Sequence record: LR756504.1
Length of the DNA stretch: 64,000 nt
Strand: one strand, 5' to 3'
Part shown: positions 2,135-24,021 of the stretch, piece by piece
How positions within the stretch are numbered: the stretch's first letter is position 1
How the letters are laid out: each line of letters begins with the position of its first letter
The notes under the pieces: model-generated
What the model saw: the letters and a program-made list of their open reading frames with translations, nothing else
Database searches by the model: none
Told to the model about the DNA's origin: nothing
Made by a program: the position numbers and the translations under genes

Positions 2135-2488
2135 TTACAATAAAGTTTTAATGATAAATTTTCTTGGTATCTCATTATTTACCAATACTTTACACATTTT
2201 ATTAATCTTTCTGTATTTTTTGATAATTTCGATAAAATAGTAAACTTTTGTTCCAAATGTAGCATCGTAACTAATATGTAAGTTCACCTCTTCATTATCA
2301 TGTTTTTCGAGAGTGATATGTACATTTTTATCAAGAAATTCTATTTTAGCAGAAACGTTTATCTTAGCAGAATAAAACAAGATAGTATGTGAATATTCGT
2401 ATATAGGTTCTCTGAATTCGAATTTTTCACCACTTTCATTAAAAATTTTTAGAGCCAAGTCTATACACTCTTGCTTTTCCATAAACAA
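2135..2488 (-). CDS. Hypothetical protein with C-terminal RxxxIxxLL tag
   Basis: 117-aa ORF in co-directional operon; ends RKFIIKTLL. Confidence 0.75.
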   Translation of the reverse strand: MFMEKQECIDLALKIFNESGEKFEFREPIYEYSHTILFYSAKINVSAKIEFLDKNVHITLEKHDNEEVNLHISYDATFGTKVYYFIEIIKKYRKINKMCKVLVNNEIPRKFIIKTLL

Positions 2489-3495: not shown

Positions 3496-4157
3496 TATAT
3501 TTCAAAATAAAAACCGTTCTCTAATTTATTTTCGTATTTCTTTTTATTAAATTTAAATAGACTACCTGCTCTATACGGCACATCCATTTGCTTCTCACTC
3601 AATTGATCAATAATATTTAATTTTAGAAATTTCTTTCTAAAATTTCTTCTATCAAATGGTATATCTAAGATAGTTTCATATAAACTTTGTAATTGAGAGA
3701 ATGGAAATTTAGATGGTAATAACTCAAATCCTATTGGTTGATATGATACTTTACTTTGCAGTCTTCTATATGCAATTTCAATTATGTTTATATGATCGAA
3801 TGCTATCAATGGGAGAGTCTTAACTGAAAACCATTTTGCGTCACATGCATCTGTTTTTGCGTGTAATAGATGTTTATCAGGATTTACTAAACCATAATAT
3901 GCAACAGACACAATTCTTTCTCTTGGATCTCTTTTTACTTCACCAAAAGTATACAGTTGTTCTAAATAAATATCTTCAATACCTGCTTCTTCTTTTAATT
4001 CTCTTTCTACTGCATCATCAACAGACTCTTCTTCTAAAACAAAACCTCCAGGTAATGCCCAAGAATCTTGAAAAGGTTCATATTTTCTTTTTATTAAAAG
4101 AATTTTCAAATCTTTTTCAACATAACCAAATACTACTGCATCTACTGTTAATTTCAT
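3495..4157 (-). CDS. nrtR: NrtR-family NUDIX + winged-helix transcriptional regulator of NAD metabolism
   Basis: TVDAVVF, WALPGGFV, RELKEEAG, LEQLYTFG..RDPR, FDH, LPSKF..SQLQSLYE, DRRNFRKK motifs. Confidence 0.9.
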   Translation of the reverse strand: MKLTVDAVVFGYVEKDLKILLIKRKYEPFQDSWALPGGFVLEEESVDDAVERELKEEAGIEDIYLEQLYTFGEVKRDPRERIVSVAYYGLVNPDKHLLHAKTDACDAKWFSVKTLPLIAFDHINIIEIAYRRLQSKVSYQPIGFELLPSKFPFSQLQSLYETILDIPFDRRNFRKKFLKLNIIDQLSEKQMDVPYRAGSLFKFNKKKYENKLENGFYFEI

Positions 4158-4701: not shown

Positions 4702-5055
4702 TTATTTAAAAAATTTTAAAATTTTCATATGTCTCGAAATTTCTTCAATTGTATCAATTCTAAGTTTACAACTAGATATAAAACCTTGATTATTAGTTTG
4801 TATTATTACTGGTTTAGCAGTTATAATGATAAAATACTTTCCTTTTTTAGTATCAAAAAGTATTAAATCTCTCCATTCCATATCACTTTTCCATATTTGA
4901 AAGTATTTTGTCAGTTCTATGTCTTTATTTTCCGTATCTATGAAAATTTCACATGATTTATTAGTGAATGCTAATTGCGTAGAAAATGAATAAGTTTCTA
5001 ATTGTAATAATTTTTTATTTTCCCATTCAATGAAAACCATAGAAAATACATGCAC
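4702..5055 (-). CDS. Hypothetical protein, weakly tail-tube-like, C-terminal RxxKIxxFF tag
   Basis: YFQIW...WRDLIL...AKPVII; ends SRHMKILKFFK. Confidence 0.65.
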   Translation of the reverse strand: MHVFSMVFIEWENKKLLQLETYSFSTQLAFTNKSCEIFIDTENKDIELTKYFQIWKSDMEWRDLILFDTKKGKYFIIITAKPVIIQTNNQGFISSCKLRIDTIEEISRHMKILKFFK

Positions 5056-5088
5056 TATTTTATGTATGTATTCTATGTATATTTCTTC

Positions 5089-5424
5089 CTATTGTAATTC
5101 TTTTATTGCTTGTTCGTACTTTTCAACAAACCAACTATTAGTAATATTATTAATATCTGCTGATATTTGACTATTTACTCTAATCATAGTCTGTCCAATA
5201 GGCGATTTTAAAAACAATAAAATTTCGTCAATATCTGATTCTGTTAAATTTTTCTCATAAAATGGTAAAATTCTTTCTTCTAATTCTTCAATATTAAAAT
5301 GTCTTTTAAATTGCGAACTTAAAACTGATTTTTCACCATCACCGTCTATTAAAGCGCTTAATTGTGCTTTAGTTAAATCATAAAATTGAGTTAACTTTAA
5401 AAATTCTTTTATTTTATCTTTCAT
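5089..5424 (-). CDS. DUF2059-like protein
   Basis: PFYEKNLTESDIDEILLFLKSPIGQ matches the Y...(L/F)T..E...l..F..SP.G pattern. Confidence 0.7.
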   Translation of the reverse strand: MKDKIKEFLKLTQFYDLTKAQLSALIDGDGEKSVLSSQFKRHFNIEELEERILPFYEKNLTESDIDEILLFLKSPIGQTMIRVNSQISADINNITNSWFVEKYEQAIKELQ

Positions 5425-5765
5425 AATAAATCTTTTATTTTGTCTTTTCGTATTTCGTATTTTAACATTTTATTTGTGTATTCATCTGATACATTGAAAT
5501 AGCAATCATACATTAATGATACTTCATATAAACCATCTCTATCAACAGTTGAAATACTTGTAGGAAATACACCATTTAATATAAACCCTGACCATTTTTC
5601 ATTTTTTTTATATGTTAAAAATATTTCTTTTGCTTTAACATTATAATTAACTATATTTTTTGACCATTCCAAATAAAATTCATAATTTAATGATGGTATG
5701 TCAAATGTTATAATGTCTTTATTTATAGTATAAGAATTTAAAATTATGTAACTTGGAAAATTCAT
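5421..5765 (-). CDS. Short gp19-like (tail tube) fragment protein with C-terminal RxxKIxxLL tag
   Basis: FYLEW...KEI...FILNGVFPTSI...EVSLMYD resembles the gp19-family C-terminal half; ends IRKDKIKDLL. Confidence 0.5.
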   Translation of the reverse strand: MNFPSYIILNSYTINKDIITFDIPSLNYEFYLEWSKNIVNYNVKAKEIFLTYKKNEKWSGFILNGVFPTSISTVDRDGLYEVSLMYDCYFNVSDEYTNKMLKYEIRKDKIKDLL

Positions 5766-6454
5766 TATTTACTTAGAATTTTATCAATCAATCCATAACC
5801 TAATGCTTCTTTAGCATCTAACCATTTATCTCTATCACAATCTCTCCATACCTTCTTAAATGGTTGTTTTGTGTTATCTGCTAATGTTTGTACTAATTCT
5901 CTCTTAATTTTTTTAATTTCTTTAGCTTCAATTTCTATATCAGATGCTTGTCCCCAAGTTCCACCAAGAGGTTGGTGTATCATAACTCTACTTCTACTAA
6001 GTGAACATCTTTTTCCTTCTGTACCATGACTTAAAATTACAGCAGCCATAGAAGCTGCTAATCCTGTACAAACAGTTGCTACATCAGTTTCAACTAAATC
6101 CATTACATCGAGAATGGAATTACCATCATAAACAGAACCACCTGGGCTATTAATGTAAAGTTTAATATCAGCCGTTTTATCTATAGATGTTAAATAAAGA
6201 AATTGTGCGGATATAACATTTGCAACATAATCATCAATTTCAGTTCCTAAAAAAATAATTCTATCCATCATTAATCTCGAAAAGACATCCATTATAGCAA
6301 TATTTAAATTTCTCTCTTCTACTATAGCAGGTGTTAAAGATGCTTGTGGAAATAGTTTTTTATATTTATCTAATGTGGTGGAAGGTACACCTTTAGATTT
6401 AGCAAATAGTGCAAAGTCTTTATCTAAATTCATAGTTTTTTCTATTTTTTTCAT
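5765..6454 (-). CDS. clpP: ATP-dependent Clp protease proteolytic subunit
   Basis: EER...MDVFSRLMMDRIIFLG, YINSPGGSV, AASMAAVIL, MIHQPLGG, CDRD motifs; Bacteroidota-like N-terminus. Confidence 0.96.
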   Translation of the reverse strand: MKKIEKTMNLDKDFALFAKSKGVPSTTLDKYKKLFPQASLTPAIVEERNLNIAIMDVFSRLMMDRIIFLGTEIDDYVANVISAQFLYLTSIDKTADIKLYINSPGGSVYDGNSILDVMDLVETDVATVCTGLAASMAAVILSHGTEGKRCSLSRSRVMIHQPLGGTWGQASDIEIEAKEIKKIKRELVQTLADNTKQPFKKVWRDCDRDKWLDAKEALGYGLIDKILSK

Positions 6455-6579
6455 AGTTTATATGAATAATTCTTATTTAGTTTAATCTATAACAATGTAA
6501 TTATTGATAATTTTTGATAATTTTTAAAACATTTGGTTTTTAAAAACGTAGAATGGTTAAATTATTGAATATTTTAGTT

Positions 6580-7629
6580 ATGAGCGAAAAAATAAATCCT
6601 GACGTAAAGAAAAAAATTGATAACATATTTGATGATGATAATACTGATAATCAAGTTGTTACTGTAAAAGAAGAAGCTATATCATCAGTAATACCTACTG
6701 ATACTAAATCTAAAGCATCTAAATTTTTAGATGATGTTGAGGATGAAGAACCTAAGAAAGCTGAGAAAAAAATTGATACTACGCCAATTAAACAAAGAAT
6801 TAAAGAACTTTATATACAATGCTTAGAATCTGCTAAAGTAAAAGATAAAGAAGGTATTTTATCAACATATGTAGAGGATTTGTATAATCCCGATACTACA
6901 AAACTCGATGATGGAAACTTACTTTTAAATTTATTAGTATTATCTCGTTTACAGGAATTAAATATTATTGATTTTTATTTTGATGATAATATGAAAAATC
7001 ATTCATCTACTGACTATCAATTAGATTTAAAGTGGTATGAGAAAATATTAGAGCAACCTGTAGAAGAACAAGCTAAATATGTTCATATTCTTGAAAGCAA
7101 TTTTAAATTGAAGTTCTATAAGAATATGTTTGAATCAATTTTGAAGTCTGCTGATAAAATGGCATACAATCAGAATAAGGTTAAAATGAAAAATGTGTGG
7201 AAGTTTATTGAAGATGAAACATCCACAGATTTCGATATTGAAGAATATTTTATTCAATTTATCGAAGATAAAACATTAGATGGTTCTGTTATAATGGTTA
7301 CACCAGATTTAACACCTTACTTCAAATTTGAAACCAAAAATGATGAAGAGTATGCAGAAAAACCTTATATAAAACTTGTCGGTAAATGGAAAAATAGATT
7401 CATTTATGAAATTGATACAAACCAAGTGGCATATCTTAAGGGTTTTAAACGTGGTGCGTTCTTTATTAAAGAAGGTAATAGATACGTAGTTAATCCTACT
7501 AGGCCACTAGTTTATTTTAATACTGTAAAAAATCCATTTGTTAATAATCCAATATTGTTGTTGTTTGCATCATTAGATTTTAATTTCTATACATCTGCTA
7601 CAACTTTCTTGAGAGTAGAAGATATGTAA
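6580..7629 (+). CDS. Hypothetical protein
   Basis: About 350-aa ORF; ATG at 6580 preferred over the track start at 6553. Confidence 0.8.
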   Translation: MSEKINPDVKKKIDNIFDDDNTDNQVVTVKEEAISSVIPTDTKSKASKFLDDVEDEEPKKAEKKIDTTPIKQRIKELYIQCLESAKVKDKEGILSTYVEDLYNPDTTKLDDGNLLLNLLVLSRLQELNIIDFYFDDNMKNHSSTDYQLDLKWYEKILEQPVEEQAKYVHILESNFKLKFYKNMFESILKSADKMAYNQNKVKMKNVWKFIEDETSTDFDIEEYFIQFIEDKTLDGSVIMVTPDLTPYFKFETKNDEEYAEKPYIKLVGKWKNRFIYEIDTNQVAYLKGFKRGAFFIKEGNRYVVNPTRPLVYFNTVKNPFVNNPILLLFASLDFNFYTSATTFLRVEDM

Positions 7630-7638
7630 ATAAATAAC

Positions 7639-7956
7639 ATGAATAAATATTTAAGAATTTTAGAAGATTTGGATAAACATGGTGTTGGTAAAATGAAGTG
7701 TTTTGGAAATTCAATGACACCAATTTTAAAAACGGGCTCTTTAATCACATTCGAAAAACAAGATGAATATCAAGTTGGTGATATAGTCTTTTGTAAAGTG
7801 AACGGCAGATTTATTGATGCTCATAAGATTACTAAAATAGATGCAGAAGGTAGATTTTTGATTGCAAATAATCATGGTTGGGAAAATGGATGGACTAAAC
7901 ATATTTTTGCTAAAGCTATTAAATCTGAATGTGATGATAATGAAAAACAATTGTAA
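7639..7956 (+). CDS. S24/S26 family peptidase-like protein
   Basis: GNSMTPIL..G, VGDIVF, AHKI motifs. Confidence 0.75.
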   Translation: MNKYLRILEDLDKHGVGKMKCFGNSMTPILKTGSLITFEKQDEYQVGDIVFCKVNGRFIDAHKITKIDAEGRFLIANNHGWENGWTKHIFAKAIKSECDDNEKQL

Positions 7957-7958
7957 CT

Positions 7959-7986
7959 AAAAAAGGGAGTTAAAACTCCCTTTTTT
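7959..7986. terminator. Bidirectional intrinsic terminator
   Basis: AAAAAAGGGAGTT-AA-AACTCCCTTTTTT between convergent genes. Confidence 0.85.
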
Positions 7987-7999
7987 ATATTATTTAAAA

Positions 8000-8443
8000 T
8001 TATTCAGCATCTTCTTCAATATCTAAGTCTTCACCTTCTTCATCTTCAGTTTTCTCTTCGCCTTCTTCTTCGTGAGATTCTTCGGATTCTTCATCATCAG
8101 CAATTAAGATAGCTTGAACTTTATCTTCAATAGCATCAACAATAGCATCAGCAATGACATCTTTGTCTTCATCATCACCTAATTCATTCATAACACCATC
8201 AATAATATCTCTAAGATTATCAGCATAATTGGAATCTAAAATAGCAACAATTTTATCTTTTAATTCTGTGTTTTCTTCTTCAACGTCTTCTTCGTGAGAT
8301 TCTTCATCATCAGCAAATTCATCATCATTATGAGTTTCTTCTGTATTATTATCTTCTAATTCGTCTGGTAATAGCGCATCATCTTCGAATTCATGTAAAT
8401 AGGATTCTTTGAATAATGAGAAAGATTTAATTCTTCTTTTCAT
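8000..8443 (-). CDS. Highly acidic protein with capsid-targeting-like N-terminus
   Basis: MKRRIKSFSLFKE|S; D/E-rich; TTATATATA upstream. Confidence 0.75.
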   Translation of the reverse strand: MKRRIKSFSLFKESYLHEFEDDALLPDELEDNNTEETHNDDEFADDEESHEEDVEEENTELKDKIVAILDSNYADNLRDIIDGVMNELGDDEDKDVIADAIVDAIEDKVQAILIADDEESEESHEEEGEEKTEDEEGEDLDIEEDAE

Positions 8444-8520
8444 GAGTTATAAACTATTTTTTAGTATATATAAAGATAATATATTCACTTTTTGACAGTT
8501 TATACCAAATTTAATTTATT

Positions 8521-8552
8521 TTTGTGATTTAAAATAATATCTTGTATATTTG
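8521..8552 (+). promoter_or_regulatory. Bacteroidota housekeeping-sigma promoter (-33 TTTG, -7 TATATTTG)
   Basis: TTTG 8521-8524, 20-nt spacer, TATATTTG 8545-8552, upstream of RNA ligase. Confidence 0.75.
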
Positions 8553-8585
8553 CATTTTATATTATCTTTATGTATATTTACTATT

Positions 8586-9248
8586 ATGAAGATTAAATAC
8601 CCAAGAAGTTTTCACATTCCATACTCAGAAAATTGTACTACAGATGATAAAATGTGTAAATCTGATGCACATTTCGAAAATGAAGTAGTTGTTGGAACTA
8701 TAAAAATGGATGGTGAAAATACAACAATATACAACGATTATATTCATGCTAGATCATTATCATCGAATATGGATACGGAAGACCGTAGATGGATAGATAC
8801 ATTAAGACTTTTAAAAATTCGAGGTAATATATCAGAAACTCAAAGAATTGTTGGTGAAAATTTATTTTATAAACATACTTGTAATTATAATAGTTTATTG
8901 GATTTTTTTTATATGTTTTCTTTATGGGATGGTGATGTGTGTTTAAGTTGGGAAGAAACTAAAAATATTGCAAATAAGTTAAATTTGGTTACTGTACCAG
9001 AATTTTATTATGGTATTTATGATAAAGATAAAATATTAAAAGATTTTGATAATTACATAAAAAATTCTTCTGATGATGTTGAAGGATTTGTTATTAGAAA
9101 AGCTGACAGTTTTAATATTAATGATTTTAGTAATAATTTAAACAAATTTGTTAGAAAAACGTTTATTATACCACAAAATCACTGGAGACATAGTAAAAAA
9201 GAATTTAATAAATCTATTGATGGTGTAAATCCTTGGGAAAAATTATGA
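8586..9248 (+). CDS. RNA ligase (Rnl2-like / ATP-dependent nucleotidyltransferase family)
   Basis: KYPRSFH.P, KMDGEN (motif I), GENL, FSLWD, EGFVIR, KFVR. Confidence 0.85.
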   Translation: MKIKYPRSFHIPYSENCTTDDKMCKSDAHFENEVVVGTIKMDGENTTIYNDYIHARSLSSNMDTEDRRWIDTLRLLKIRGNISETQRIVGENLFYKHTCNYNSLLDFFYMFSLWDGDVCLSWEETKNIANKLNLVTVPEFYYGIYDKDKILKDFDNYIKNSSDDVEGFVIRKADSFNINDFSNNLNKFVRKTFIIPQNHWRHSKKEFNKSIDGVNPWEKL

Positions 9249-9724
9249 AATATAGAGTAAAGCAAGATGTAAGAAAAGGAAGATTTTATCCACAAATAAG
9301 AATTTTAGGTTTGTGGTTATATTTTAGCTATGATAATTCTATTATAATAGCTAAAACAAAAAATGCTTATTATACGGATAGTGTGGAGACATCGTGGGCG
9401 TGCGTAAATGTTCATAAGCATCATAAGGGAACTAATGGAACTACATATGAATATTTACCCAATATGCTCGGATTTAGACTTAAAAAGGTAACTAAAAATG
9501 GTAATATTAAATATCATGCGCAAAAAAGATTTATCTTTATATGGTATAGATTTGGTAGAAATAATGATATAAATTATGAAAGACATGTACACTATAGTGC
9601 CCAAAGTGGATGGGATTATATTATAAGATTAGATACACTATTTAAAACACCAAAGCCGAAAAAAGTACTTTACCATTACCCAGAAAAAACAAGAAAAGAA
9701 AAAATTAAATCTTTAAAGGTATGA
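9245..9724 (+). CDS. Hypothetical protein with internally duplicated module and C-terminal RxxKI tag
   Basis: KYRVKQ..RFYPQ.R.LGLW and FRLKKV..KYHAQKR.IFIW repeats; ends RKEKIKSLKV. Confidence 0.7.
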   Translation: MKYRVKQDVRKGRFYPQIRILGLWLYFSYDNSIIIAKTKNAYYTDSVETSWACVNVHKHHKGTNGTTYEYLPNMLGFRLKKVTKNGNIKYHAQKRFIFIWYRFGRNNDINYERHVHYSAQSGWDYIIRLDTLFKTPKPKKVLYHYPEKTRKEKIKSLKV

Positions 9725-9909
9725 AATATTTAAAATGGATTTTACTACTTTCAGCTATTTTGCTTATCATTATAAGTATATGTTCAATATTAAAAATTAA
9801 AAGTGTTATAGCATTTGGTTTGAGTATTGTTATAGTTGTTGCATTATTAGTTTTGAATTTTTGTAATTTCAAATACATTAATGATATTAAAAAGAAATAT
9901 GATTTATAA
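9721..9909 (+). CDS. Small two-helix membrane protein
   Basis: Two hydrophobic stretches; ATGA overlap with upstream gene. Confidence 0.7.
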   Translation: MKYLKWILLLSAILLIIISICSILKIKSVIAFGLSIVIVVALLVLNFCNFKYINDIKKKYDL

Positions 9910-9939
9910 GCGAATTAATAATTTTACTAAAAGTTTAAA

Positions 9940-10057
9940 GGATGCCTATTACGTCTAATAGGCAGAGCCTTATGGTCATATCTTACTCCTATGTAATTTG
10001 ATTCACCGAAAAAGTCCTCAGCAAGTGTGCATCTTCATCATAGGTAGAGAGGCATCT
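9940..10057. ncRNA. Candidate structured RNA element between convergent genes
   Basis: GC-richer than flanks; 9-bp hairpin 9943-9964, GATGCCT/AGGCATC long-range pair, CCTATG/CATAGG pair. Confidence 0.35.
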
Positions 10058-10103
10058 AAGGAACTAATAATAAATAAAGCTATTCTAATATTTTTTCTAT
10101 TTT

Positions 10104-10904
10104 CTATTTTCTTCCTAGTCCAAAGTAAGCTCTTAATTTAGATTCATAATCCTTAACTTTTAGTATCTTTGGTTCATCAATTGATGGTGGAATATAAACT
10201 AATGCGCAAGAATCAACGTGAATATCATATTCAGAAAGAATTAATTTATATAAATTTAATTGAATTGAATACTTATTTAATTCATTCTCCCATTCATCAT
10301 GAAATGGTGCTTTAAGTTTTTGCCAACATTTATCAGCATCAGTGGACATTTTAGCATTAGTTTTATAATCTAAAATCATCAATTTACCATTTCTCATAAA
10401 AAGTCCATCAATAGTTCCAGCCAATTTTAATTTTCTTGAAAATATTCTTAATTCTTGTGCAATTGGAATTACATTAGTTAATTTTGATTCATATAATGTT
10501 TCAAATTTATCAATCCTTCTTAGGGTTTCTAAGTCTTCGAAATTATCTCTTGTGATTGTTGATCCAGGTGTAAATTTATTTTCAATATAAAAATGAACAT
10601 TTGTACCCATATCACAAGCAGTATCCCTCTTTTTATCCCATTCGCCAATAATTTCTTTTATTGTCAAATCTAAATCAGGATCATTATCTTTTATTTGCTC
10701 ACGCGAAATACCTCTTTTCTCAGCTATTCTATCTTTAGCTTTTCTCTTACTCCAATATTCAGCATCAAATGGTTCTGAGAAATTTTTAATAAAAGTAGTT
10801 ACTGATGTTAATTTCTCTTTTCCATATGTATAAGCATGTGCTTTTTCATCGAAAACAAAATTATCATCATTAAATATTTTTATTTTGTCTAAAATTTCTT
10901 GCAT
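10104..10904 (-). CDS. PD-(D/E)XK exonuclease (RecB/Cas4-like phage nuclease)
   Basis: SVTT, GTNVH.YIE, ELRIFS, AGTIDGL, ILDYKT, YSIQLNLY. Confidence 0.88.
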   Translation of the reverse strand: MQEILDKIKIFNDDNFVFDEKAHAYTYGKEKLTSVTTFIKNFSEPFDAEYWSKRKAKDRIAEKRGISREQIKDNDPDLDLTIKEIIGEWDKKRDTACDMGTNVHFYIENKFTPGSTITRDNFEDLETLRRIDKFETLYESKLTNVIPIAQELRIFSRKLKLAGTIDGLFMRNGKLMILDYKTNAKMSTDADKCWQKLKAPFHDEWENELNKYSIQLNLYKLILSEYDIHVDSCALVYIPPSIDEPKILKVKDYESKLRAYFGLGRK

Positions 10905-10986
10905 TTTATAAATATTTTACTTTTATACAAGAGAATTAAATTTAGTTTAGTGATAAAACAAAATTAAAATTTAGTATAAATATGCT

Positions 10987-11334
10987 ATGGAAACTATAAT
11001 TATCAACTTAGACAGTGATGAATCATTATCAAATATTGCACAATATAGTTTAACTTGTAATGTTTCAAAATCTAAAAATAGAAAATTTTTTAGAAAATGG
11101 ATTAATGATATTTTTAGTTATGAGGTTAGTGGAAGTCGTGCTAAACATATTATATTTATATGGAATAATGATATTATTGGATTTGGTAATGTGATAATAA
11201 CATCAATAGAAACATATGTTGGTGATGAAAATAGAATGGAAGTTAGTTTAGTATATGATTACAATTTGAATATTAATAATAACTCAGAAATGAAAAGACT
11301 AATGAGAAAAAAAATAATTAATCAATTAATTTAA
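10987..11334 (+). CDS. Short tail-tube-like protein with C-terminal RKKIIxxLI tag
   Basis: FFRKWINDI...ITSI...EVSLVYDY; similar to 5421-5765. Confidence 0.5.
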   Translation: METIIINLDSDESLSNIAQYSLTCNVSKSKNRKFFRKWINDIFSYEVSGSRAKHIIFIWNNDIIGFGNVIITSIETYVGDENRMEVSLVYDYNLNINNNSEMKRLMRKKIINQLI

Positions 11335-11598
11335 TAAATCTGAATCTAAATCAGTATTATAAGGATTGCATTTTTTGAAATAATTCTCAACTTCCCCATC
11401 AAATTTCACATCTGCTCTAATATGACTTTTTATATCTTCGATAGTAATCATACTATCATCAACGTTGATTACTTTATAAGTAGTTCCTCTTTTTAATTTA
11501 TCATCATAATCTTTTATGAATACTATTTCTTCACCTTTTTTGTAATTTAACGCACATTTTGGAGTTTTAAAGCTTTCGAAAGTTTTGATGTGTTTCAT
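11326..11598 (-). CDS. Small protein with capsid-targeting-like N-terminus
   Basis: MKHIKTFESF start. Confidence 0.7.
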   Translation of the reverse strand: MKHIKTFESFKTPKCALNYKKGEEIVFIKDYDDKLKRGTTYKVINVDDSMITIEDIKSHIRADVKFDGEVENYFKKCNPYNTDLDSDLLN

Positions 11599-11600
11599 AA

Positions 11601-12074
11601 TTAAAATCTATTAGTCTTTGTAATTGTTGGTTTTATTTCAAGCCATTCTTTAGCTATATTTATCAAATTGTTTATACATTTTTCATATGTAAGCATTATA
11701 CTCTGTTCTGCGTAAACTTTTTTGATTTTTTTTATGGTAGATTCTATTTTTCTATACGCTTCGATAATTTTAGTATCATCTCTAACTATAACTTTACCAT
11801 CAACATGTTTAATATAAGGTATTACAGCGTTTGTGGTTATAATTTTATTAAATATTTCTGTTACTTTTTCTAATTGATGAACATAGTCTTCGAACATATA
11901 GTCTTCTTGTTCTTTTGAAAGTAAGACATATCTTTTTTCTAATTCATTTGTAGCTGAATATAATTTTATTATTAATTTTTGTACCATAACTTCATCAGTT
12001 TCTTCCTCTCTTTTTTTAAATAATGACATTAATCCTTCATTTAAAAAATCATTAAATTGTAGTATATGTTTCAT
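11601..12074 (-). CDS. Helical protein with capsid-targeting-like N-terminus
   Basis: MKHILQFNDFLNE|G; TTATATATA immediately upstream. Confidence 0.75.
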   Translation of the reverse strand: MKHILQFNDFLNEGLMSLFKKREEETDEVMVQKLIIKLYSATNELEKRYVLLSKEQEDYMFEDYVHQLEKVTEIFNKIITTNAVIPYIKHVDGKVIVRDDTKIIEAYRKIESTIKKIKKVYAEQSIMLTYEKCINNLINIAKEWLEIKPTITKTNRF

Positions 12075-12136
12075 ATAGTATATATAAAAAAAGACTTGAT
12101 ATTTTTAATATATAATAAAAAGTATTAAGATATACT

Positions 12137-12589
12137 ATGAAAAATAAATATGTAAAAGGTTTCGACGATTACAGAAAAGCTATCAAAGAAGGATTAAACA
12201 TTTATGAATTTGAAGATGATGTTCAAGAACCTGTTGCTGATTTAGATACTGAAACTGAAAAAGCAGAAGAAGCACCATCAACAGAAGAAACTCCCATAAC
12301 TGAACCAGAAACTACGGAAGAACCTATTGAAGAACCTGCTGTAGAAGAACCTGCTGTAGAAGAACCAAAGGAAGATGTTTCTGAACCTGTTGCATCTAAT
12401 GATGAAGCTAAACCATTAGATTTTGGTGATAATGGTAATGGTAGTATGTCGGAAGATGAATTGACAACTAAATTGGATTTCATTAGCGGTATTATCGATG
12501 AATATAAAAAACTTATCAAAAAAGGTGATGTTGTGGATACTAATAAAATTCAAACAAAAATACAAAGTGCATTTGATTCGGTATCATAA
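12137..12589 (+). CDS. Acidic E/P-rich protein with capsid-targeting-like N-terminus
   Basis: MKNKYVKGFDDYRKAIKE|G; EEPAV repeats; AATATATA upstream. Confidence 0.75.
   Translation: MKNKYVKGFDDYRKAIKEGLNIYEFEDDVQEPVADLDTETEKAEEAPSTEETPITEPETTEEPIEEPAVEEPAVEEPKEDVSEPVASNDEAKPLDFGDNGNGSMSEDELTTKLDFISGIIDEYKKLIKKGDVVDTNKIQTKIQSAFDSVS
12329..12366 (+). repeat. In-frame 15-nt tandem repeat (EEPAV)
   Basis: GAAGAACCTGCTGTA x2 plus partial third copy. Confidence 0.8.
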
Positions 12590-12592
12590 ATT

Positions 12593-12619
12593 AAAAAGCC
12601 TCTAATTTAGAGGCTTTTT
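12593..12619. terminator. Bidirectional intrinsic terminator
   Basis: AAAAAGCCTCTA-ATT-TAGAGGCTTTTT between convergent genes. Confidence 0.85.
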
Positions 12620-13306
12620 TTATAATATTTCATAAACAATTTCAAAAAATGAATCAATATAACTATTCTCCAATTCATTTAAATTAAACTTCATTTTATC
12701 AAACGGTATTCTATTTAAAGAATCTTTTTTATGTTCAAAAAAAACATCTAATTGATTAAACAATAATTTTTCTAATCTAAATTTTTTTTCATCATCTGTA
12801 ATATCAGGTGATATAATATCTCTTTTTATAGTTATAAGTTCATCAAAGAAAGGAGTGTTAATAAATAATTCTTTTATTTTATCAATTAGATAATAAAACT
12901 TAACGCCAGAGTTTCTAAAAATTTCCTCGTGTTCTTTACCATTATAAACATTAAGGGCTACAACTTCTTTTATATTCTTCCTTGCTATTCTTTTAGCGCA
13001 CATTTTACACGGTGTCATTGTTACAAATAAAATGTGATTCTCTGGATCAATCATATTAGCTTCAATGATAGCATTTTCTTCTGCATGAAGAAATCCTGAT
13101 TCACCAGACACCATAGAATCCCTTTCATTGGGACCACCAGGATAATTACCATTATATCCTATAGCAGCAATTTTAGAAAATTCCTTATTAACTACAATTG
13201 AACCAACTTGATACTTCTTATCATAACTTAAAGATGCAACCCTTTCTGTCATTTTCATAAAAGTAAGATTCTTTAAAATTTTTCTAAGATTGCTATTAGA
13301 TGTCAT
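12620..13306 (-). CDS. dCMP deaminase family protein
   Basis: QVGS.V, IGYNG, HAEENAI, PCKMC zinc motifs. Confidence 0.9.
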   Translation of the reverse strand: MTSNSNLRKILKNLTFMKMTERVASLSYDKKYQVGSIVVNKEFSKIAAIGYNGNYPGGPNERDSMVSGESGFLHAEENAIIEANMIDPENHILFVTMTPCKMCAKRIARKNIKEVVALNVYNGKEHEEIFRNSGVKFYYLIDKIKELFINTPFFDELITIKRDIISPDITDDEKKFRLEKLLFNQLDVFFEHKKDSLNRIPFDKMKFNLNELENSYIDSFFEIVYEIL

Positions 13307-13353
13307 TTAATATCAGAGTTTTTATATATAGAAAAAAGTTATAATAAGTTTTA

Positions 13354-15672
13354 ATGAAATATTTAAAAAGATTTGATTTTTTATTTGAAGGTTTAATTTT
13401 AGAAAAAGTTGTAGTTTGTAGTGATGAATTGGTTAAAATCCTTAAAACTATGGAAAGCCCTGTAGCTAAAACTCTGTTAAAAGCACAGGAAGAGAGTGCT
13501 GATGTAGTTGATAATTCTTATATAGATTTTGATAAGGAAGATGGTTTAGTTTCTTATTTACCTGCTAATAGAGAAATTAACAGAGATAATGGTCAAGAAA
13601 TAGCAGACAAATGGAATGTTAGAGGTAGACAAAAGATTTCTATTGGTAAATTAGCGAAAGCTATAGTAATTAAATTAGGTGTACATTATTCAGAATCAGA
13701 AATAGAGAAATTTGTAAATGAATATAAATCCAAGCAAAAACCAACAAGATTTGTTTTAGCAAAAGACGAAGCATCCATAAAGAAATATTACTACGAAGAT
13801 AATTACGATAGATTTAGTATGGTTGGTGATTCATCTCTTATAAATAGTTGTATGAGAGGCACTAATGCACAAGATTTCTTCTCTATTTACTACAATAATG
13901 ATACACCATGCAAACTTTTAGTTTTATTGAATAATGAAAACAATAAAGTTATGGGTAGAGCCATTATATGGGATAATGTTATCGATAATAATGATAATGG
14001 TAAAATATTTACATTTATGGATAGAATATACACCATTGATTCAGCATTAGAAGAATCATTTAAAGCATATGCAAGAGAAATAGGGTGGTGGTATAAAGAA
14101 ACTCAAAGTAGTGGGAGATATGCTATAACTGATGGTAAAACATCTAAAGAGTTACCGCTTTTAAAAGTTTCTGTACCTAATATAGAATGGGATGCTGTAG
14201 AAATGCCTTATATGGATACGTTTGCATATTTAGGATATGAGTATATAGATGGTAAATTTCAACCATTTTTATATAATGAAGTTTATAAAAGTAGTAAATT
14301 ACATAACTGGTATCTTAAATTTCGTTCTCAATCTGGAGGTAATGAAGAAAAAATCTATTATAACAGAAATAAAGATGTTTTTGGAAATAGAATAATTAAT
14401 CCCAATGCAAAAGTATTAAAAGAATATGATGATTATGTGTGGATGATAGATGACGATAATGATGATTTATTGGATCCAAATAATTTTGAAACTGTTTACA
14501 TATTATTTAAAAAAAATCGAAATGGTATCGGGGATGCTATAGTTGCTTTAGGTATTGATAATACAAATGATGAAGCCGATGGTTTATGTGTGGTAGAAAC
14601 TGCAATATACGAAAATAGATTTGGAGATTACATATCATTTAGTTCAGAAATAGCTGACATAGTTAAACAACAAAATAATCTAATAAAGTACAAAGATTGG
14701 GAATATGATGGTAACTTTAAAATACCAGGACATATAAAAGATCCTGAAATTCTTAATACAATTTTAAATCATACTGATAAACAATGGATAGAGCATGGTA
14801 TAGCTTTATATGAAGCTACCAATAAAGAATGTGCGGAAGTAATATTAAAATATAAACCAGATATTCTAAAAAATAATAATGTTTCCAACTTACTTAGTTT
14901 AATGAAATATGGCTTGATTGAAAATAATAATATTGGCGATAAAATAAAAAAATGTGGTGTATCCGATTTAGTGTATAAAGATGATTTTTTATGGGTTTCA
15001 TTTGAAGAGTATATTCAATTAATTTTTATGTTTAATGATAGTGATAAAGTTTATCACAGAATATCATCAAGAAAATATGCAAAAGATATTTTAAGCGGGA
15101 GTTGGGATTATGGTTATATAGAATATTCTTTAAATGATATTGATTTTTCTACAATAAATGAAAAAAATAGAGAAACTATATTAACATTAATGGAAAATGA
15201 TATTGCTATTATTAAGTCTTGGTTCGAAGAAAATGAACTTGTGTGGAATGATAATTGGAAAGATATATTTAGAAATAATATTTCTGGTAAATTGATACGG
15301 CTAGTTCTTAAAACTGATTATAAAGATATTAGTGATGCTATAAAATATTCTATGAATAATGCACAAGAAAATGCTGATTTAGAACAAGCGTATGATAAAA
15401 TCACAGATAGACTTGTTGATATTACTACTATTGTAATGGATGATGTAGAAAGTGGGCCAAGATTTCAATTTAAATACGAATGGTTAATAGCGGTAAAATA
15501 CGATGATAAAAAAATTCTTAATGCTATAAAACGTTATTATGAAGATTGGGAAGATTTTAATATAGATGAACCACGATTTACTACAGTTAATATTCCGCAT
15601 CGTGGATGGCAGGGTGATGTATCTAATGCTCAATTTAATGAGGAATTACAGTATAGATTAGGAGAAATTTAA
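13354..15672 (+). CDS. Large protein with capsid-targeting-like N-terminus and SCM...RAIIW...DRIY (PcfJ/GNAT-like) domain
   Basis: MKYLKRFDFLFE; NSCMRG, VMGRAIIW, FMDRIY, PYMDTF motifs; fold call is inference. Confidence 0.5.
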   Translation: MKYLKRFDFLFEGLILEKVVVCSDELVKILKTMESPVAKTLLKAQEESADVVDNSYIDFDKEDGLVSYLPANREINRDNGQEIADKWNVRGRQKISIGKLAKAIVIKLGVHYSESEIEKFVNEYKSKQKPTRFVLAKDEASIKKYYYEDNYDRFSMVGDSSLINSCMRGTNAQDFFSIYYNNDTPCKLLVLLNNENNKVMGRAIIWDNVIDNNDNGKIFTFMDRIYTIDSALEESFKAYAREIGWWYKETQSSGRYAITDGKTSKELPLLKVSVPNIEWDAVEMPYMDTFAYLGYEYIDGKFQPFLYNEVYKSSKLHNWYLKFRSQSGGNEEKIYYNRNKDVFGNRIINPNAKVLKEYDDYVWMIDDDNDDLLDPNNFETVYILFKKNRNGIGDAIVALGIDNTNDEADGLCVVETAIYENRFGDYISFSSEIADIVKQQNNLIKYKDWEYDGNFKIPGHIKDPEILNTILNHTDKQWIEHGIALYEATNKECAEVILKYKPDILKNNNVSNLLSLMKYGLIENNNIGDKIKKCGVSDLVYKDDFLWVSFEEYIQLIFMFNDSDKVYHRISSRKYAKDILSGSWDYGYIEYSLNDIDFSTINEKNRETILTLMENDIAIIKSWFEENELVWNDNWKDIFRNNISGKLIRLVLKTDYKDISDAIKYSMNNAQENADLEQAYDKITDRLVDITTIVMDDVESGPRFQFKYEWLIAVKYDDKKILNAIKRYYEDWEDFNIDEPRFTTVNIPHRGWQGDVSNAQFNEELQYRLGEI

Positions 15673-15700
15673 TAATTTTTGAAAAATATTATAGAATTTG

Positions 15701-15731
15701 TTGGTTTTTACTAAAAAATACATTAACTTTG
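15701..15731 (+). promoter_or_regulatory. Bacteroidota housekeeping-sigma promoter
   Basis: TTG 15701-15703, 20-nt spacer, TAACTTTG 15724-15731. Confidence 0.7.
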
Positions 15732-15752
15732 TATCTGTAATTATCAAAGAAT

Positions 15753-16826
15753 ATGGCATTAAAACACATCAAAGATTATAACGCTCATGGTATTTCAGAA
15801 TCAGTTGTAAACTGGATTCAAGTCATTGTTGAAGTGTATTACAAAGAAATGTTGAAGAAGTTTTCTGACACTAAAAATGATACATTCACCAAACATTCAG
15901 CCGATTACTCACTTGTACATAATGTATTTATGGATAAAAAATACATTGAAAAATTTGTACACAAGAATGATATAGTTCTTAAAATGGCGGATAAGTGGAA
16001 TATTAAGTTTAATCTTTATGGACAACTAGATGTTAAGGACTATCCACTTGATATGTCTGCAAACATCATTTTGGACGACAAAACAGTAAATTTGATAGTA
16101 AACTGTAATTTTAATGAAGAAGATTGGAGAGCAATTTTAACAAATGACGATTTTCTCGATGAACTAGAAGATACGTTGGCTTATGAGTTGACTAAATTAA
16201 TAGAAAAATTAAATTTAAAGAAAAACAAGAAGAAAACATTTCATAAAGGATATCAACTTAACGCGATTAAAAACTATTTTAAATCAGGTGTTATAGATGA
16301 TAATGACTATGCAATGATTTATCTACTAACTTGTATAAGTTTGAGTGTTAAACATGAAATTAGTGCAAGGGTAAATCAGTTCTTTCAAGAAGTTGAAAGA
16401 TATGATGTTGAAAACACTCATTCTTTTGAGGATTTTTGGAGAAAATCAATACACTATAAAATTTATGAGGCTTTGAAAAATTTTAATGCAGATGAAATTT
16501 TCAATGAGCTTGTTAAAGTTCATGGTGTGGAATATTTAAAAAATGAAATCATTTTACAATGGGATGAATACGCTAAATCTAACGATGAACTATCGGATGT
16601 TAGAGTCAAAAAGAAGTATATCGATAACCCATTAGAATTTATAAAATATTGGGAATCTGTATTTAAGAGCGCTGCCGAATATTATAGAAGAAAGTGTATG
16701 AAAGCTTACTCAGCACATTTCTCAATGGATGATATTAAGAAGAAACGAGACGAAGAAAGAAAAAAAGAAGAAAAGAAAACACCAACATATAACTATCAAA
16801 GTAATAGTTATGATAATTGGGATTAA
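15753..16826 (+). CDS. Hypothetical protein, capsid-targeting-like start, degenerate zincin-like motif
   Basis: MALKHIKDY...ISE|S; LAYELTKL where HExxH would be expected. Confidence 0.6.
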   Translation: MALKHIKDYNAHGISESVVNWIQVIVEVYYKEMLKKFSDTKNDTFTKHSADYSLVHNVFMDKKYIEKFVHKNDIVLKMADKWNIKFNLYGQLDVKDYPLDMSANIILDDKTVNLIVNCNFNEEDWRAILTNDDFLDELEDTLAYELTKLIEKLNLKKNKKKTFHKGYQLNAIKNYFKSGVIDDNDYAMIYLLTCISLSVKHEISARVNQFFQEVERYDVENTHSFEDFWRKSIHYKIYEALKNFNADEIFNELVKVHGVEYLKNEIILQWDEYAKSNDELSDVRVKKKYIDNPLEFIKYWESVFKSAAEYYRRKCMKAYSAHFSMDDIKKKRDEERKKEEKKTPTYNYQSNSYDNWD

Positions 16827-16836
16827 ATAAGAAATG

Positions 16837-16862
16837 AAAAAGGACTCTTATGAGTCCTTTTT
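16837..16862. terminator. Bidirectional intrinsic terminator
   Basis: AAAAAGGACTC-TTAT-GAGTCCTTTTT. Confidence 0.85.
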
Positions 16863-17354
16863 TCTATTATATGTAATGAATTGTATATTTAATTCAACAT
16901 TCTCTTTTTTATCAAAATCTGTAATATTTTCAATATTGTGTATAGAGAAATTTTTCAATTCATTCTCTAAAAATTTGATATTAGCATCATATTTTCTTTC
17001 ACATTCGACTTTCGTTAATTCTATCACATCTATATAAGGCATAAATAGTTGACAAATTTCAGAACCACCAATAACCCAAATATCCTCTGTTTTAGCCATT
17101 TCAAGAACTGGTATAATTGAATCAAATATCAAATCAGGATTTTTATTTAACTCCATATAAGCCCTTGAAATCACTATATTTGTCCTATTAGGAAGCTTGA
17201 ATGGTAAGCTCTCCCATGTCTTCCTTCCCATAACAACAGTTTTCTTTGATGTTAATTCTTTAAATCTTTTTAAGTCCTTTGCGAAATGGTATTGTAAACT
17301 ATTTTCAAATCCAATACCCCAATTATTATCACATGCTAATATTATACTTATCAT
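16848..17354 (-). CDS. folA: Dihydrofolate reductase
   Basis: IILACD.NWGIG, DLKRFKELT, VVMGRKTWESLP..LPNRTNIVIS, WVIGG. Confidence 0.95.
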   Translation of the reverse strand: MISIILACDNNWGIGFENSLQYHFAKDLKRFKELTSKKTVVMGRKTWESLPFKLPNRTNIVISRAYMELNKNPDLIFDSIIPVLEMAKTEDIWVIGGSEICQLFMPYIDVIELTKVECERKYDANIKFLENELKNFSIHNIENITDFDKKENVELNIQFITYNRKKDS

Positions 17355-17533
17355 TTTAGTAACTCTTTTATAATTTTTTTGCGGTTTTTAATTTTTTCAT
17401 TTCTAATTTGTATTTCCAACTTTTTTATATGCTCTTCAAAAGCATCAGCAGGATAAATTCTACCCGAATTTGCTTGTGGAAACTGTAGAAATATACTTTC
17501 TAATATTATTCTATCGTTCTGACTCGATTTCAT
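17351..17533 (-). CDS. 60-aa protein resembling the gp21 prohead protease N-terminus fused to an RKKIIxxLL tag
   Basis: LESIFLQ...NSGRIYP...EE; ends NRKKIIKELLK; no catalytic His/Ser region. Confidence 0.55.
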   Translation of the reverse strand: MKSSQNDRIILESIFLQFPQANSGRIYPADAFEEHIKKLEIQIRNEKIKNRKKIIKELLK

Positions 17534-17627
17534 TTAAAAGTTCTTTAATTCTTATATTATTTATTGTTATATAGTTTAAAAAATAGAATAGAAATAAAAA
17601 AGTGTTGTATTCCAACACTTTTTTAAC

Positions 17628-23999: not shown

Positions 24000-24021
24000 N
24001 NNNNNNNNNNNNNNNNNNNNN
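24000..24021. other. Assembly gap (22 N)
   Basis: Run of N right after the tRNA cluster. Confidence 1.

What the first reader, a model, noticed from the sequence alone, without database searches (positions are those of the whole stretch)
4702..17533. Truncated mimics of virion proteins (tail tube gp19, prohead protease gp21) fused to the C-terminal tag
17351-17533 is 60 aa with LESIFLQ...NSGRIYP, recognisable as the gp21 N-terminal motif but with no catalytic region. 5421-5765 (FYLEW...ILNGVFPTSI...EVSLMYD), 10987-11334 (FFRKW...EVSLVYDY) and weakly 4702-5055 resemble gp19-family tail-tube segments. All four end in the shared tag and lie outside structural modules. Inference: decoys that titrate host sensors of structural proteins, or dominant-negative inhibitors of co-infecting relatives.
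Basis: inference. Interest (0 to 1): 0.68.

Follow-up and report, generated by a model that had tools for sequence, protein, structure and literature searches.

The report
Small tail-tube-fold proteins with shared tail
A 636-kb soil phage makes three small proteins with the fold of a phage tail tube or Hcp protein, plus one mini-protein resembling the start of its head protease; three of the four end in a short peptide motif shared by about 9% of the phage's genes, and what they do (decoy, tail part or protease-linked factor) is not settled.

Summary
The four ORFs exist as described, in uncultured phage LR756504.1 (636 kb, soil).

- **B and C:** B (5421-5765) and C (10987-11334) are paralogues. 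A confident model of B has the Hcp/contractile tail-tube fold (Z up to 9.2) followed by an extra C-terminal helix.
- **A:** A (4702-5040) probably has the same fold, but only by the ESM Atlas's own model. My model of A failed.
- **D:** D (17351-17533) matches the N-terminal motif of this phage clade's S77/S80 prohead protease (14.6 bits, E 9e-4; 0 of 3000 shuffles reach it). It has no catalytic part.
- **The tag:** R-K-x-[K/I]-I-x-x-L-L lies at the C-terminus of 28 other genes, against 1.6 expected. B, C and D carry it. A carries a variant.

- A, B and C are complete, conserved small genes (dN/dS 0.14-0.51), not truncated copies. They show no sequence link to the phage's own 187-aa tube.
- D's protease-like part is missing in the closest relative. 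D is the leader ORF of a D-DHFR bicistron.
- ClpP-B-DUF2059-A is a conserved, translationally coupled block, and the phage encodes ClpX-like and ClpA/C-like ATPases.

The decoy idea is neither supported nor excluded. My best reading is accessory tube-fold proteins docked by a common C-terminal motif, possibly onto the phage's Clp machinery.

The parts
5421..5765 (-). B: 114-aa protein. Residues 1-95 (5481-5765) form an Hcp/tail-tube fold; a C-terminal helix spans residues 94-113.
   Evidence: AF2 model pLDDT 82.9. Fold searches. Orthologues P0002 (76% identity) and P0006. dN/dS 0.20.
5424..5450 (-). C-terminal tag of B (R-K-D-K-I-K-D-L-L), directly before the stop. The stop overlaps the start of the next gene (ATGA).
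   Evidence: Tag matrix 18.3 bits. Identical in the relative. Junction sequence.
10987..11334 (+). C: 115-aa paralogue of B. Its last nine residues (11305-11331) are the tag.
   Evidence: BLASTP E 5e-7 to B. Orthologue in L005. Tag 18.0 bits. dN/dS 0.51.
4702..5040 (-). A: 112-aa protein (the ORF as listed runs to 5055 from a GTG). Probable tube/Hcp fold, with a variant tag ending at 4705-4734.
   Evidence: Orthologues in L005 and L009 start at the ATG. The ESM Atlas model matches TssD/Hcp/tail tube clusters at TM 0.66-0.77. My AF2 model was poor. dN/dS 0.14.
17351..17533 (-). D: 60-aa leader ORF of the D-DHFR bicistron. Residues 3-45 (17399-17527) resemble the N-terminus of the prohead protease. 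The tag lies at 17357-17383.
   Evidence: protease match. (tag 20.2 bits). (the protease-like part is absent in the relative). (terminators, ATGA overlap with DHFR).
5765..6454 (-). ClpP proteolytic subunit. Its stop overlaps B's start (TAATG).
   Evidence: Pfam CLP_protease 231.7 bits. Junction. Same order in L005/L006 and L009/L010.
5089..5424 (-). DUF2059 protein, lying between B and A in the conserved block.
   Evidence: Pfam PF09832 E 3.8e-11. Synteny.
16848..17354 (-). Dihydrofolate reductase, translationally coupled to D.
   Evidence: Pfam DHFR_1 E 3.8e-37. ATGA overlap.
17595..17625 (.). Bidirectional terminator-like hairpin upstream of D. Together with the hairpin at 16837-16862 it bounds the D-DHFR unit.
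2135..2488 (-). Another tag-bearing 117-aa protein in the same leftward gene string. It has no detectable relation to B or C.
   Evidence: The tag is kept in the relative.

Best explanation
A, B and C are real, complete accessory proteins of about 113 aa. Each has a minimal Hcp/tail-tube beta-barrel (shown for B, inferred for its paralogue C, probable for A). After it comes a short C-terminal helix ending in the lineage-wide motif R-K-x-[K/I]-I-x-x-L-L.

They are not truncated copies of the phage's own tube gene. They are also not part of the conserved virion core. B and A sit in a translationally coupled ClpP-B-DUF2059-A block next to NAD-salvage genes.

I infer that the motif is a docking or recognition peptide that brings about 30 otherwise unrelated small proteins to one common partner. 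The likeliest partner is the phage's own Clp proteolysis machinery (ClpP plus ClpX-like and ClpA/C-like ATPases). The motif would then act either as a tether, as in the SspB adaptor, or as a C-terminal degron. In this reading the tube-fold domain is the part that binds something else or forms a ring.

D is a small, fast-changing leader ORF of the DHFR operon. Its conserved part is the tag helix. Its protease-like N-terminal 40 residues are a lineage-specific captured or diverged fragment, not a conserved functional mimic.

Shown: the folds, paralogy, selection, synteny, motif enrichment and the D-protease similarity. Inferred: that the motif docks onto a partner, the Clp link, and what D's protease-like fragment does, if anything.
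For: Fold:
- B model pLDDT 82.9.
- Hcp and tail tube proteins dominate the structure searches.
- The Atlas model of A matches the same fold families.

Real genes:
- Orthologues exist in two other phage lineages.
- dN/dS is 0.14, 0.20 and 0.51 for A, B and C.

Not core virion:
- The real tube (187 aa, phrog_45, beside the sheath and terminase) has 60 homologue clusters by the same word search that finds one relative for B and none for D.
- A full HMM search of 1.84 billion proteins adds only two more B/C relatives.
- There is no profile similarity to the tube family.

Operon:
- ClpP/B overlap as TAATG and B/DUF2059 as ATGA.
- The gene order is kept in L005/L006 and L009/L010.

Tag:
- 28 carriers against 1.6 expected, with A-D left out.
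- An unbiased all-against-all comparison of C-termini also exceeds both nulls.
- Synonymous codons vary, so the motif is at protein level.
- It is kept in relatives and in more distant phages.

Clp machinery: ClpP, a 385-aa ClpX-like ATPase and a 648-aa ClpA/C-like ATPase.

D: protease match. The N-terminal part is missing in the relative while a tag-like tail remains. The bicistron lies between terminators.
Against: - No direct evidence links the tag to Clp. The complex prediction of B with ClpP, DUF2059 and A gave no verdict.
- More distant phage ClpP loci lack B/A neighbours, so the association is narrow.
- Small tube-fold proteins of 105-120 aa are known as tail terminators and tail-tip parts (matches), and giant phages scatter structural genes. 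A virion role therefore stays open.
- The same promoter-like motif precedes structural and non-structural genes, so timing could not be inferred.
- The fold of A rests on a moderate-confidence model that I did not make.
- Some weak 'tag' carriers are ordinary enzymes (CCA-adding enzyme, PRPP synthetase), where the ending may be coincidental.
Confidence: 0.4

Rival explanations
1. A, B and C are minor structural tail proteins. They would be tube terminator, tube initiator or tail-tip adaptor-like rings that stack on the 187-aa tube, and merely happen to be encoded far from the main tail module, as is common in giant phages.
For: Structural matches include small tube-fold virion parts:
- T4 neck-tail complex chain, Z 7.1.
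- Mu terminator, 117 aa, Z 6.4.
- Lambda tail-tip protein, 109 aa, Z 5.7 (all).
- A 105-aa 'tail completion and sheath stabilizer' protein, with the best TM of 0.56/0.60.

A and B are under purifying selection. The same promoter-like motif occurs before structural and other genes.
Against: - Their distribution is very narrow compared with the real tube.
- B is translationally coupled to ClpP and DUF2059, inside a string of NAD-salvage and Nudix genes.
- C evolves fast (dN/dS 0.51).
- The extra C-terminal helix and motif is shared with about 28 unrelated small proteins and is not part of the tube fold (only residues 1-99 align).
Confidence: 0.25
2. The tube-fold proteins are decoys that occupy host sensors of tail tube proteins (DSR2- or Avs16-like) without activating them, or that poison the tail assembly of co-infecting relatives. 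D would similarly interfere with a prohead protease.
For: - Tail tube proteins are known triggers of DSR2 and of an Avs family (PMC10981675; PMC12803255).
- DSR2 depletes NAD+, and phages counter that with Nampt-based NARP2 (bioRxiv 10.1101/2024.02.11.579819).
- The same leftward gene string here carries Nampt, a 328-aa Nudix protein and an NrtR-like regulator.
- A, B and C have the tube fold but lie outside the tail module.
Against: - There is no sequence or profile similarity to the phage's own tube, so any mimicry would be of fold only.
- A fold-level mimic would be expected to trigger a shape-recognising sensor rather than silence it.
- D's protease-like part is not conserved in the nearest relative.
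- No defence-system assay or binding evidence exists.
Confidence: 0.12
3. D is not a functional protein at all. It would be an upstream leader ORF, or the remnant of a recombination event, kept open only because its 3' end provides translational coupling for DHFR. Its protease similarity would be a molecular fossil.
For: - The N-terminal 40 residues are deleted or replaced in the closest relative, which still has a short ORF overlapping the DHFR start.
- No homologue exists in 5.8 billion clustered proteins.
- A second fragment-like ORF matches the C-terminal protease motif elsewhere in the genome (G000 196901-197065).
- Many homing endonucleases in this genome could promote such fragments.
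Against: - D carries one of the best-scoring copies of the tag (20.2 bits), and the relative's short ORF keeps a tag-like tail. This suggests that at least the C-terminal half is translated and selected.
- The similarity to proteases is only 35-40% identity, so it is not a recent fragment.
Confidence: 0.35

Closest known systems
Hcp (T6SS TssD) and contractile tail tube proteins (T4 gp19 family, PVC/Afp tube proteins)
   Same: The predicted fold of B residues 1-95: a beta-barrel/sandwich with one flanking helix. Z 9.2-7.4 to Hcp1, Hcp3, Bacteroides Hcp5 and the PVC tube, and 20-23% identity to PVC/Afp tube chains in Foldseek alignments.
   Different: - No Pfam PF06841 or other profile match.
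- Only about 95 residues of core, against 140-190.
- An extra C-terminal motif helix.
- Not next to sheath or baseplate genes.
- No evidence of ring or tube formation.
The phage's own tail tube protein (G000 215579-216142; LR756504 about 162.3-162.9 kb; phrog_45)
   Same: Presumably the same fold class.
   Different: - 187 aa, lying beside the sheath and terminase.
- 60 homologue clusters.
- No significant sequence or profile similarity to A, B or C.
- No tag.
T4 gp21-type prohead protease (MEROPS S77; also S80), here the 764-aa ORF at G000 190797-193091
   Same: D residues 3-45 align to the N-terminal strand-loop motif (protease residues 76-112), inside the stretch that matches Pfam Peptidase_S77.
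   Different: D is 60 aa with no catalytic His/Ser region. It gives no Pfam hit, is 35-40% identical at best, and is not conserved in the closest relative.
SspB-type ClpX adaptors and C-terminal ClpX degrons (ssrA-like and MuA-like classes). Named from my own knowledge, not tested here.
   Same: Architecture only: a small beta-rich domain followed by a short basic/aliphatic peptide at the extreme C-terminus, encoded beside ClpP in a genome that also has Clp ATPases.
   Different: No sequence or fold relation to SspB. The motif differs from known tether or degron sequences. Binding is untested (one search gave no verdict).
DSAD1, the phage inhibitor of the tail-tube sensor DSR2
   Same: A small phage protein that acts on a sensor of tail tube protein (PMC10981675, PMC11087589). 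This is the nearest precedent for the decoy idea.
   Different: No similarity was tested or found. DSAD1 did not appear among the structural matches listed. Whether DSAD1 is tube-like was not established here.

Membership tests
Phage_T4_gp19 (PF06841) / Hcp-tail tube superfamily | Significant match to the family's sequence profile | tested here: not met
   No Pfam hit for A, B or C at E<=10. PF06841 finds nothing in G000 or LR756504.1. No gp19 among the PDB sequence hits.
Phage_T4_gp19 (PF06841) / Hcp-tail tube superfamily | Tube/Hcp fold (beta-sandwich barrel with a flanking helix) | tested here: met
   B: Z 9.2-5.5 to Hcp and tail tube chains, with about 90 residues aligned; BFVD tail tube hits with probability 0.99-1.00. 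A: Atlas model TM 0.66-0.77 to TssD/Hcp/tail tube clusters, but my own model was unusable. C: by paralogy to B.
Phage_T4_gp19 (PF06841) / Hcp-tail tube superfamily | Hexameric ring that stacks into a tube; presence in the virion | not testable with these tools
   Only four copies can be co-folded. The phage is uncultured, and only DNA runs from soil hold it.
Phage_T4_gp19 (PF06841) / Hcp-tail tube superfamily | Encoded with sheath, baseplate or other tail genes | tested here: not met
   The sheath, tube and terminase cluster lies more than 100 kb away. The neighbours here are ClpP, DUF2059, Nudix, Nampt, a nuclease, a deaminase and DHFR.
Prohead protease S77/S80 (T4 gp21 type), for D | Catalytic domain with His/Ser residues; profile match over the domain | tested here: not met
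   D is 60 aa. Only residues 3-45 align, to profile positions 21-64 of 208. No Pfam hit.
Prohead protease S77/S80 (T4 gp21 type), for D | N-terminal strand-loop motif of the protease | tested here: met
   14.6 bits, E 9e-4 over 911 ORFs. 0 of 3000 shuffles reach it. It is the best non-self hit in the genome by single sequence.
Clp adaptor or degron-tagged substrate | C-terminal peptide that binds a Clp ATPase, or that causes degradation | tested here: inconclusive
   The motif is enriched at C-termini and Clp genes are present. The only binding test (B with ClpP, DUF2059 and A) gave no verdict. The ATPases were not tested.
Anti-defence decoy of tail-tube sensors | Binds or silences a tube-sensing defence protein | not tested
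   No host or defence system is known for this phage. The only support is context: a NARP2-like pair in the same gene string.

The most novel reading that the evidence does not exclude
The C-terminal motif R-K-x-[K/I]-I-x-x-L-L is a phage-specific address label read by the phage's own Clp unfoldases. About 30 small proteins would be either timed-degradation substrates or adaptors. The tube/Hcp-fold proteins B, A and C would be ring- or cup-shaped adaptors that hand bound cargo, from the host or the phage, to the ClpP encoded beside them. That would be a virus-encoded, self-contained targeted-proteolysis system built on a tail-tube fold.
Probability: 0.12. Interest if true: 0.8.

Novelty: new variant of a known kind. 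Interest (0 to 1): 0.5.

Why it matters
It shows that the tail-tube/Hcp fold has been reused in a megaphage for small proteins that are probably not part of the virion.

These proteins belong to a larger set of about 30 proteins that all end in one conserved C-terminal peptide. Such a shared label implies a hub partner. That partner could be a protease, a clamp, a capsid or something unknown, and a single pull-down could identify it.

If the partner is the phage's own Clp system, this would be a rare case of virus-encoded programmed proteolysis in bacteria. If the proteins turn out to be sensor decoys, it would be a new counter-defence principle.

Either way, the sequence gives concrete, cheap experiments for proteins that had no annotation at all.

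Tried and rejected
Searches that found nothing
- Pfam, PHROGs and PDB sequence searches of A-D gave nothing relevant.
- tblastn against 50,697 phage records found only the window's own genome.
- The search for related loci with the B/C alignment, the A alignment, B alone and the tube alone found nothing usable.

Comparisons that were not significant
- Profile-profile comparison of A against B/C, so A's relation to B/C rests on fold only.
- A, B and C against the own tube, as a single sequence or as a 28-sequence family.

Predictions that failed or gave no answer
- The AF2 model of A from a 3-sequence alignment had pLDDT 40.5. It was unusable and not searched.
- The complex prediction of B with ClpP, DUF2059 and A gave no verdict. 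It is not evidence either way.

Explanations of the tag that I rejected or could not support
- A DNA-level repeat or promoter artefact: rejected, because the synonymous codons for R, I and L vary between copies and the downstream DNA is unrelated.
- A by-product of ATGA start/stop overlap: only some carriers overlap a downstream start.
- A membrane-targeting amphipathic helix: not favoured. The hydrophobic moment of the last 14 residues is at the 10th-17th percentile for C and B.
- A sliding-clamp (PIP-like) motif: the spacing fits, but no DnaN or gp45 profile match exists in the genome. A host clamp is not excluded.
- Other tagged proteins of about 115 aa as hidden B/C paralogues: no core similarity by hhalign.

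Context analyses that did not help
- Temporal class from promoters: one TTTTAATATATAA-like motif precedes structural and non-structural genes alike, so nothing could be inferred.
- More distant phage ClpP loci do not have B/A neighbours.

Other points
- The Lon N-terminal domain appeared among the Foldseek hits by E-value. It has a lower TM and is absent from the top 50 of the exhaustive search, so I rejected it as the fold.
- No RNA runs hold the region.
- The N run at 24000-24021 was left untouched.

Full report
**What the window is.** The window is 100% identical to GenBank LR756504.1, an unannotated 636,363-bp 'uncultured phage'. It is also held as a 288,572-bp IMG/VR record, G000, where the window is 28373-92372 on the minus strand. 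GC content is about 25-30%. Only soil metagenome DNA runs hold the region, and no RNA runs. The masked N run at 24000-24021 was not touched.

**The four ORFs.** All four are present.
- A is 4702-5055 on the minus strand. Two relatives start at the internal ATG, so 4702-5040 (112 aa) is the likely gene.
- B is 5421-5765 on the minus strand, 114 aa.
- C is 10987-11334 on the plus strand, 115 aa.
- D is 17351-17533 on the minus strand, 60 aa.
- None has a Pfam or PHROG family or a PDB sequence relative.

**B and C have a tail-tube/Hcp fold.**
- B and C are paralogues (34% identity, E 5e-7).
- A word search found one orthologue of B, P0002 at 76% identity.
- A full HMM search of 1.84 billion representative proteins added only P0006 (112 aa) and P0007 (137 aa).
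- With this six-sequence alignment, AlphaFold2 gave a confident model of B (pLDDT 82.9, pTM 0.71). It has three strands, a helix (residues 25-39), four strands, then a C-terminal helix at 94-113 whose confidence falls towards the end.
- An exhaustive structural comparison with 48,161 PDB chains put Hcp proteins first (Z 9.2, 8.5, 8.2, 8.2, 8.1, 8.1). The next thirty places were filled almost entirely by tail tubes of contractile systems, tube terminators and siphophage tubes, always over residues 1-99.
- Foldseek against PDB and against BFVD gave the same families. These include PVC/Afp tube chains at 20-23% identity, and proteins annotated as gp19 tail tube, tube initiator, and tail completion and sheath stabilizer.
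- Lon N-domains appeared in Foldseek by E-value, but with lower TM. They are absent from the exhaustive top 50, so I reject them.

**A probably has the same fold.** My AF2 model of A, from three sequences, was unusable (pLDDT 40.5). The ESM Atlas holds its own model of A (pTM 0.55). Its structural neighbours are TssD/Hcp and several phage tail tube families (TM 0.66-0.77 over residues 1-104). Profile comparison of A with B/C is not significant. I rate the tube fold at about 85% for B and C and about 65% for A.

**They are not truncated copies of the phage's tube.**
- The real tube is a 187-aa protein (phrog_45, E 2.4e-12). It lies downstream of the 1248-aa sheath, separated from it by a homing endonuclease, and beside the large terminase. 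In G000 it is at 215579-216142, more than 125 kb from A, B and C.
- It has 60 homologue clusters at 47-90% identity by the same word search that found one relative for B and none for D.
- Neither single-sequence nor family-profile comparison links A, B or C to it.
- A, B and C are complete minimal domains kept in relatives. Against the SRR26541667 contig, dN/dS is 0.14 (A), 0.20 (B) and 0.51 (C), at dS of about 0.45-0.55.

**Gene context.**
- On the minus strand the order is ClpP (5765-6454), B, DUF2059 (5089-5424), A, a 73-aa ORF, a DUF6527/BubE-like ORF, and an NrtR-type Nudix regulator.
- Then come two small ORFs, the tagged 117-aa ORF at 2135-2488, a 328-aa Nudix protein and Nampt.
- The ClpP stop overlaps B's start (TAATG), and B's stop overlaps the DUF2059 start (ATGA).
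- The same ClpP-B-DUF2059-A order is kept in the close relative (L005/L006) and in a more distant one whose B is only 40% identical (L009/L010). It is not kept in still more distant phage ClpP loci.
- The Nampt plus Nudix pair resembles the NARP2 NAD+ reconstitution pathway, which counters NAD-depleting defences including DSR2 (bioRxiv 10.1101/2024.02.11.579819). Assigning an Nmnat function to the 328-aa protein is my inference.
- Elsewhere LR756504.1 encodes a 385-aa ClpX-like ATPase and a 648-aa two-module ClpA/C-like ATPase. The ClpP therefore probably works with phage partners.

**D.**
- D's best non-self hit in the genome is the 764-aa prohead protease ORF (Pfam S80 and S77). It aligns at the N-terminal strand-loop motif (13/38 identical, E 0.0097).
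- A profile of 81 clade proteases scores D at 14.6 bits, E 9e-4 over all 911 ORFs, at profile positions 21-64. None of 3000 shuffles exceeds 7.8 bits.
- Identity to any clade protease is only 35-40%, so this is no recent copy.
- D has no homologue in the protein collections.
- In the closest relative the stretch encoding the protease-like part is missing. A 41-aa ORF remains there, with a tag-like tail, still overlapping the DHFR start.
- D and DHFR form a bicistron between two terminator-like hairpins, with an ATGA overlap.
- So the conserved element is the tagged leader ORF, not the protease mimic.
- A second small ORF outside the window (G000 196901-197065, 54 aa) matches the C-terminal motif of the same protease profile (E 5.6e-4; 0 of 3000 shuffles). 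It ends in a tag-like sequence.

**The tag.**
- An unbiased all-against-all comparison of the last ten residues of all genes shows far more similar pairs than internal segments do. Pairs scoring 28 or more number 23 against 4.0. Against within-segment shuffles the figures are 23 against 8.4.
- The top pairs share one motif. A matrix learnt with A-D left out finds 28 carriers, against 1.6 expected from internal positions.
- The motif is R (22/28), K (17), x, K/I/R, I (25), x, a polar and often acidic residue, L/V/I, L/I. It lies within 0-4 residues of the C-terminus, and most carriers are proteins of 50-240 aa.
- B, C and D score 18-20 bits. A scores -0.9, but it has the same spacing with F in place of L, and its L009 orthologue scores 12.1.
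- Codons vary synonymously between copies. The motif is kept in orthologues and occurs in other phages (L011, L103).
- It is not strongly amphipathic, and the tagged proteins share no detectable core.
- In the relative, the PD-(D/E)XK nuclease carries a tag that the window's copy lacks because it stops eight residues earlier. This points to a modular, removable label.

**Interpretation.**
- The parsimonious reading is that A, B and C are accessory tube-fold proteins carrying a lineage-wide C-terminal docking peptide.
- The partner is unknown. Because of the coupled ClpP gene and the phage Clp ATPases, I favour the Clp machinery, with the motif as tether or degron. This is inference only.
- A complex prediction of B with its operon partners gave no verdict and counts for nothing.
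- A structural role as a small terminator- or initiator-like ring remains a serious rival.
- The decoy idea is compatible with the NAD-salvage context and with known tube sensors (PMC10981675, PMC12803255). It has no direct support, and it is weakened by the lack of any similarity to the phage's own tube and by the non-conservation of D's mimic half.
- Promoter analysis could not assign timing.

**Verdict.** The most interesting element is the shared C-terminal motif rather than the 'mimicry'. I rate interest at 0.5, as a new variant of a known kind.

Noticed in passing
G000 genome-wide; in the window e.g. 2135-2488(-), 2827-3495(-), 9233-9724(+), 19910-20197(+), 35859-36122(-): About 28 genes besides B, C and D end in the motif R-K-x-[K/I]-I-x-x-L-L within 0-4 residues of the stop, against 1.6 expected. 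Most are small proteins of unknown function. The motif is kept in relatives and seen in other phage contigs (L011, L103).
   Followed up: partly
G000:C1:196901-197065 (-), outside the window; neighbouring ORF at 197055-197342 (-): A 54-aa ORF matches the C-terminal F-x-Y-D-x-V-x-x-P-G-F motif of the prohead protease profile (E 5.6e-4; 0 of 3000 shuffles) and ends in a tag-like sequence. It overlaps the end of a 95-aa ORF by 11 nt. It may be a second protease-fragment ORF or a frameshifted small paralogue.
   Followed up: partly
LR756504.1 about 37.6-38.7 kb and 534.5-536.4 kb (loci L120, L119); window 5765-6454: The phage encodes a full Clp set: ClpP, a 385-aa ClpX/HslU-like ATPase and a 648-aa two-module ClpA/C-like ATPase without a Clp_N domain.
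   Followed up: partly
window 3-1061(-), 1079-2065(-), 3495-4157(-): Nampt, a 328-aa protein with a C-terminal Nudix domain, and an NrtR-type Nudix/winged-helix regulator. This looks like a NARP2-like NAD+ salvage (counter-defence) set. A PRPP synthetase lies elsewhere, at G000 141297-142241.
   Followed up: partly
G000 190797-193091 (+), locus L017: The prohead protease ORF is 764 aa. An S77/S80 domain is followed by a long array of roughly 15-residue repeats (Y-S-x-Y-[IL]-A-E-x-L-D-K-x-I) and an acidic tail, like a fused scaffold. IMG/VR holds 368 relatives at about 60-66% identity, including contigs of 640-676 kb.
   Followed up: no
window 10104-10904(-) against L005:3914-4738: In the relative the PD-(D/E)XK nuclease is eight residues longer and ends in the tag. 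The window's copy stops just before it.
   Followed up: no
genome-wide in G000; e.g. upstream of D at window about 17560-17575: A promoter-like motif TTTTAATATATAA(T/C)AAAA sits about 25-30 nt upstream of many start codons. The core is present before 128 of 338 genes. It occurs in front of structural genes (sheath, tube) and metabolic genes alike.
   Followed up: partly
window 29110-30903(+); LR756504 between the sheath and tube (L101:7746-9587); L101:14369-14839: Several large HNH/homing endonuclease genes (phrog_3339/559). One separates the sheath from the tube, and one lies just upstream of the terminase.
   Followed up: no
window 7639-7956(+) against L005:7180-8106: The window has a 105-aa Peptidase_S24-like ORF at this position, where the close relative has a 308-aa GIY-YIG (LEM-3-like) nuclease. 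This is a variable slot between conserved neighbours.
   Followed up: no
window 18602-19873(+): A phage-encoded NusA-like protein (NusA_N plus KH domains).
   Followed up: no
whole record: The same sequence is held as a 636,363-bp GenBank record and as a 288,572-bp IMG/VR record. The IMG/VR record is classed as complete with inverted terminal repeats, so the two assemblies disagree on genome size.
   Followed up: no
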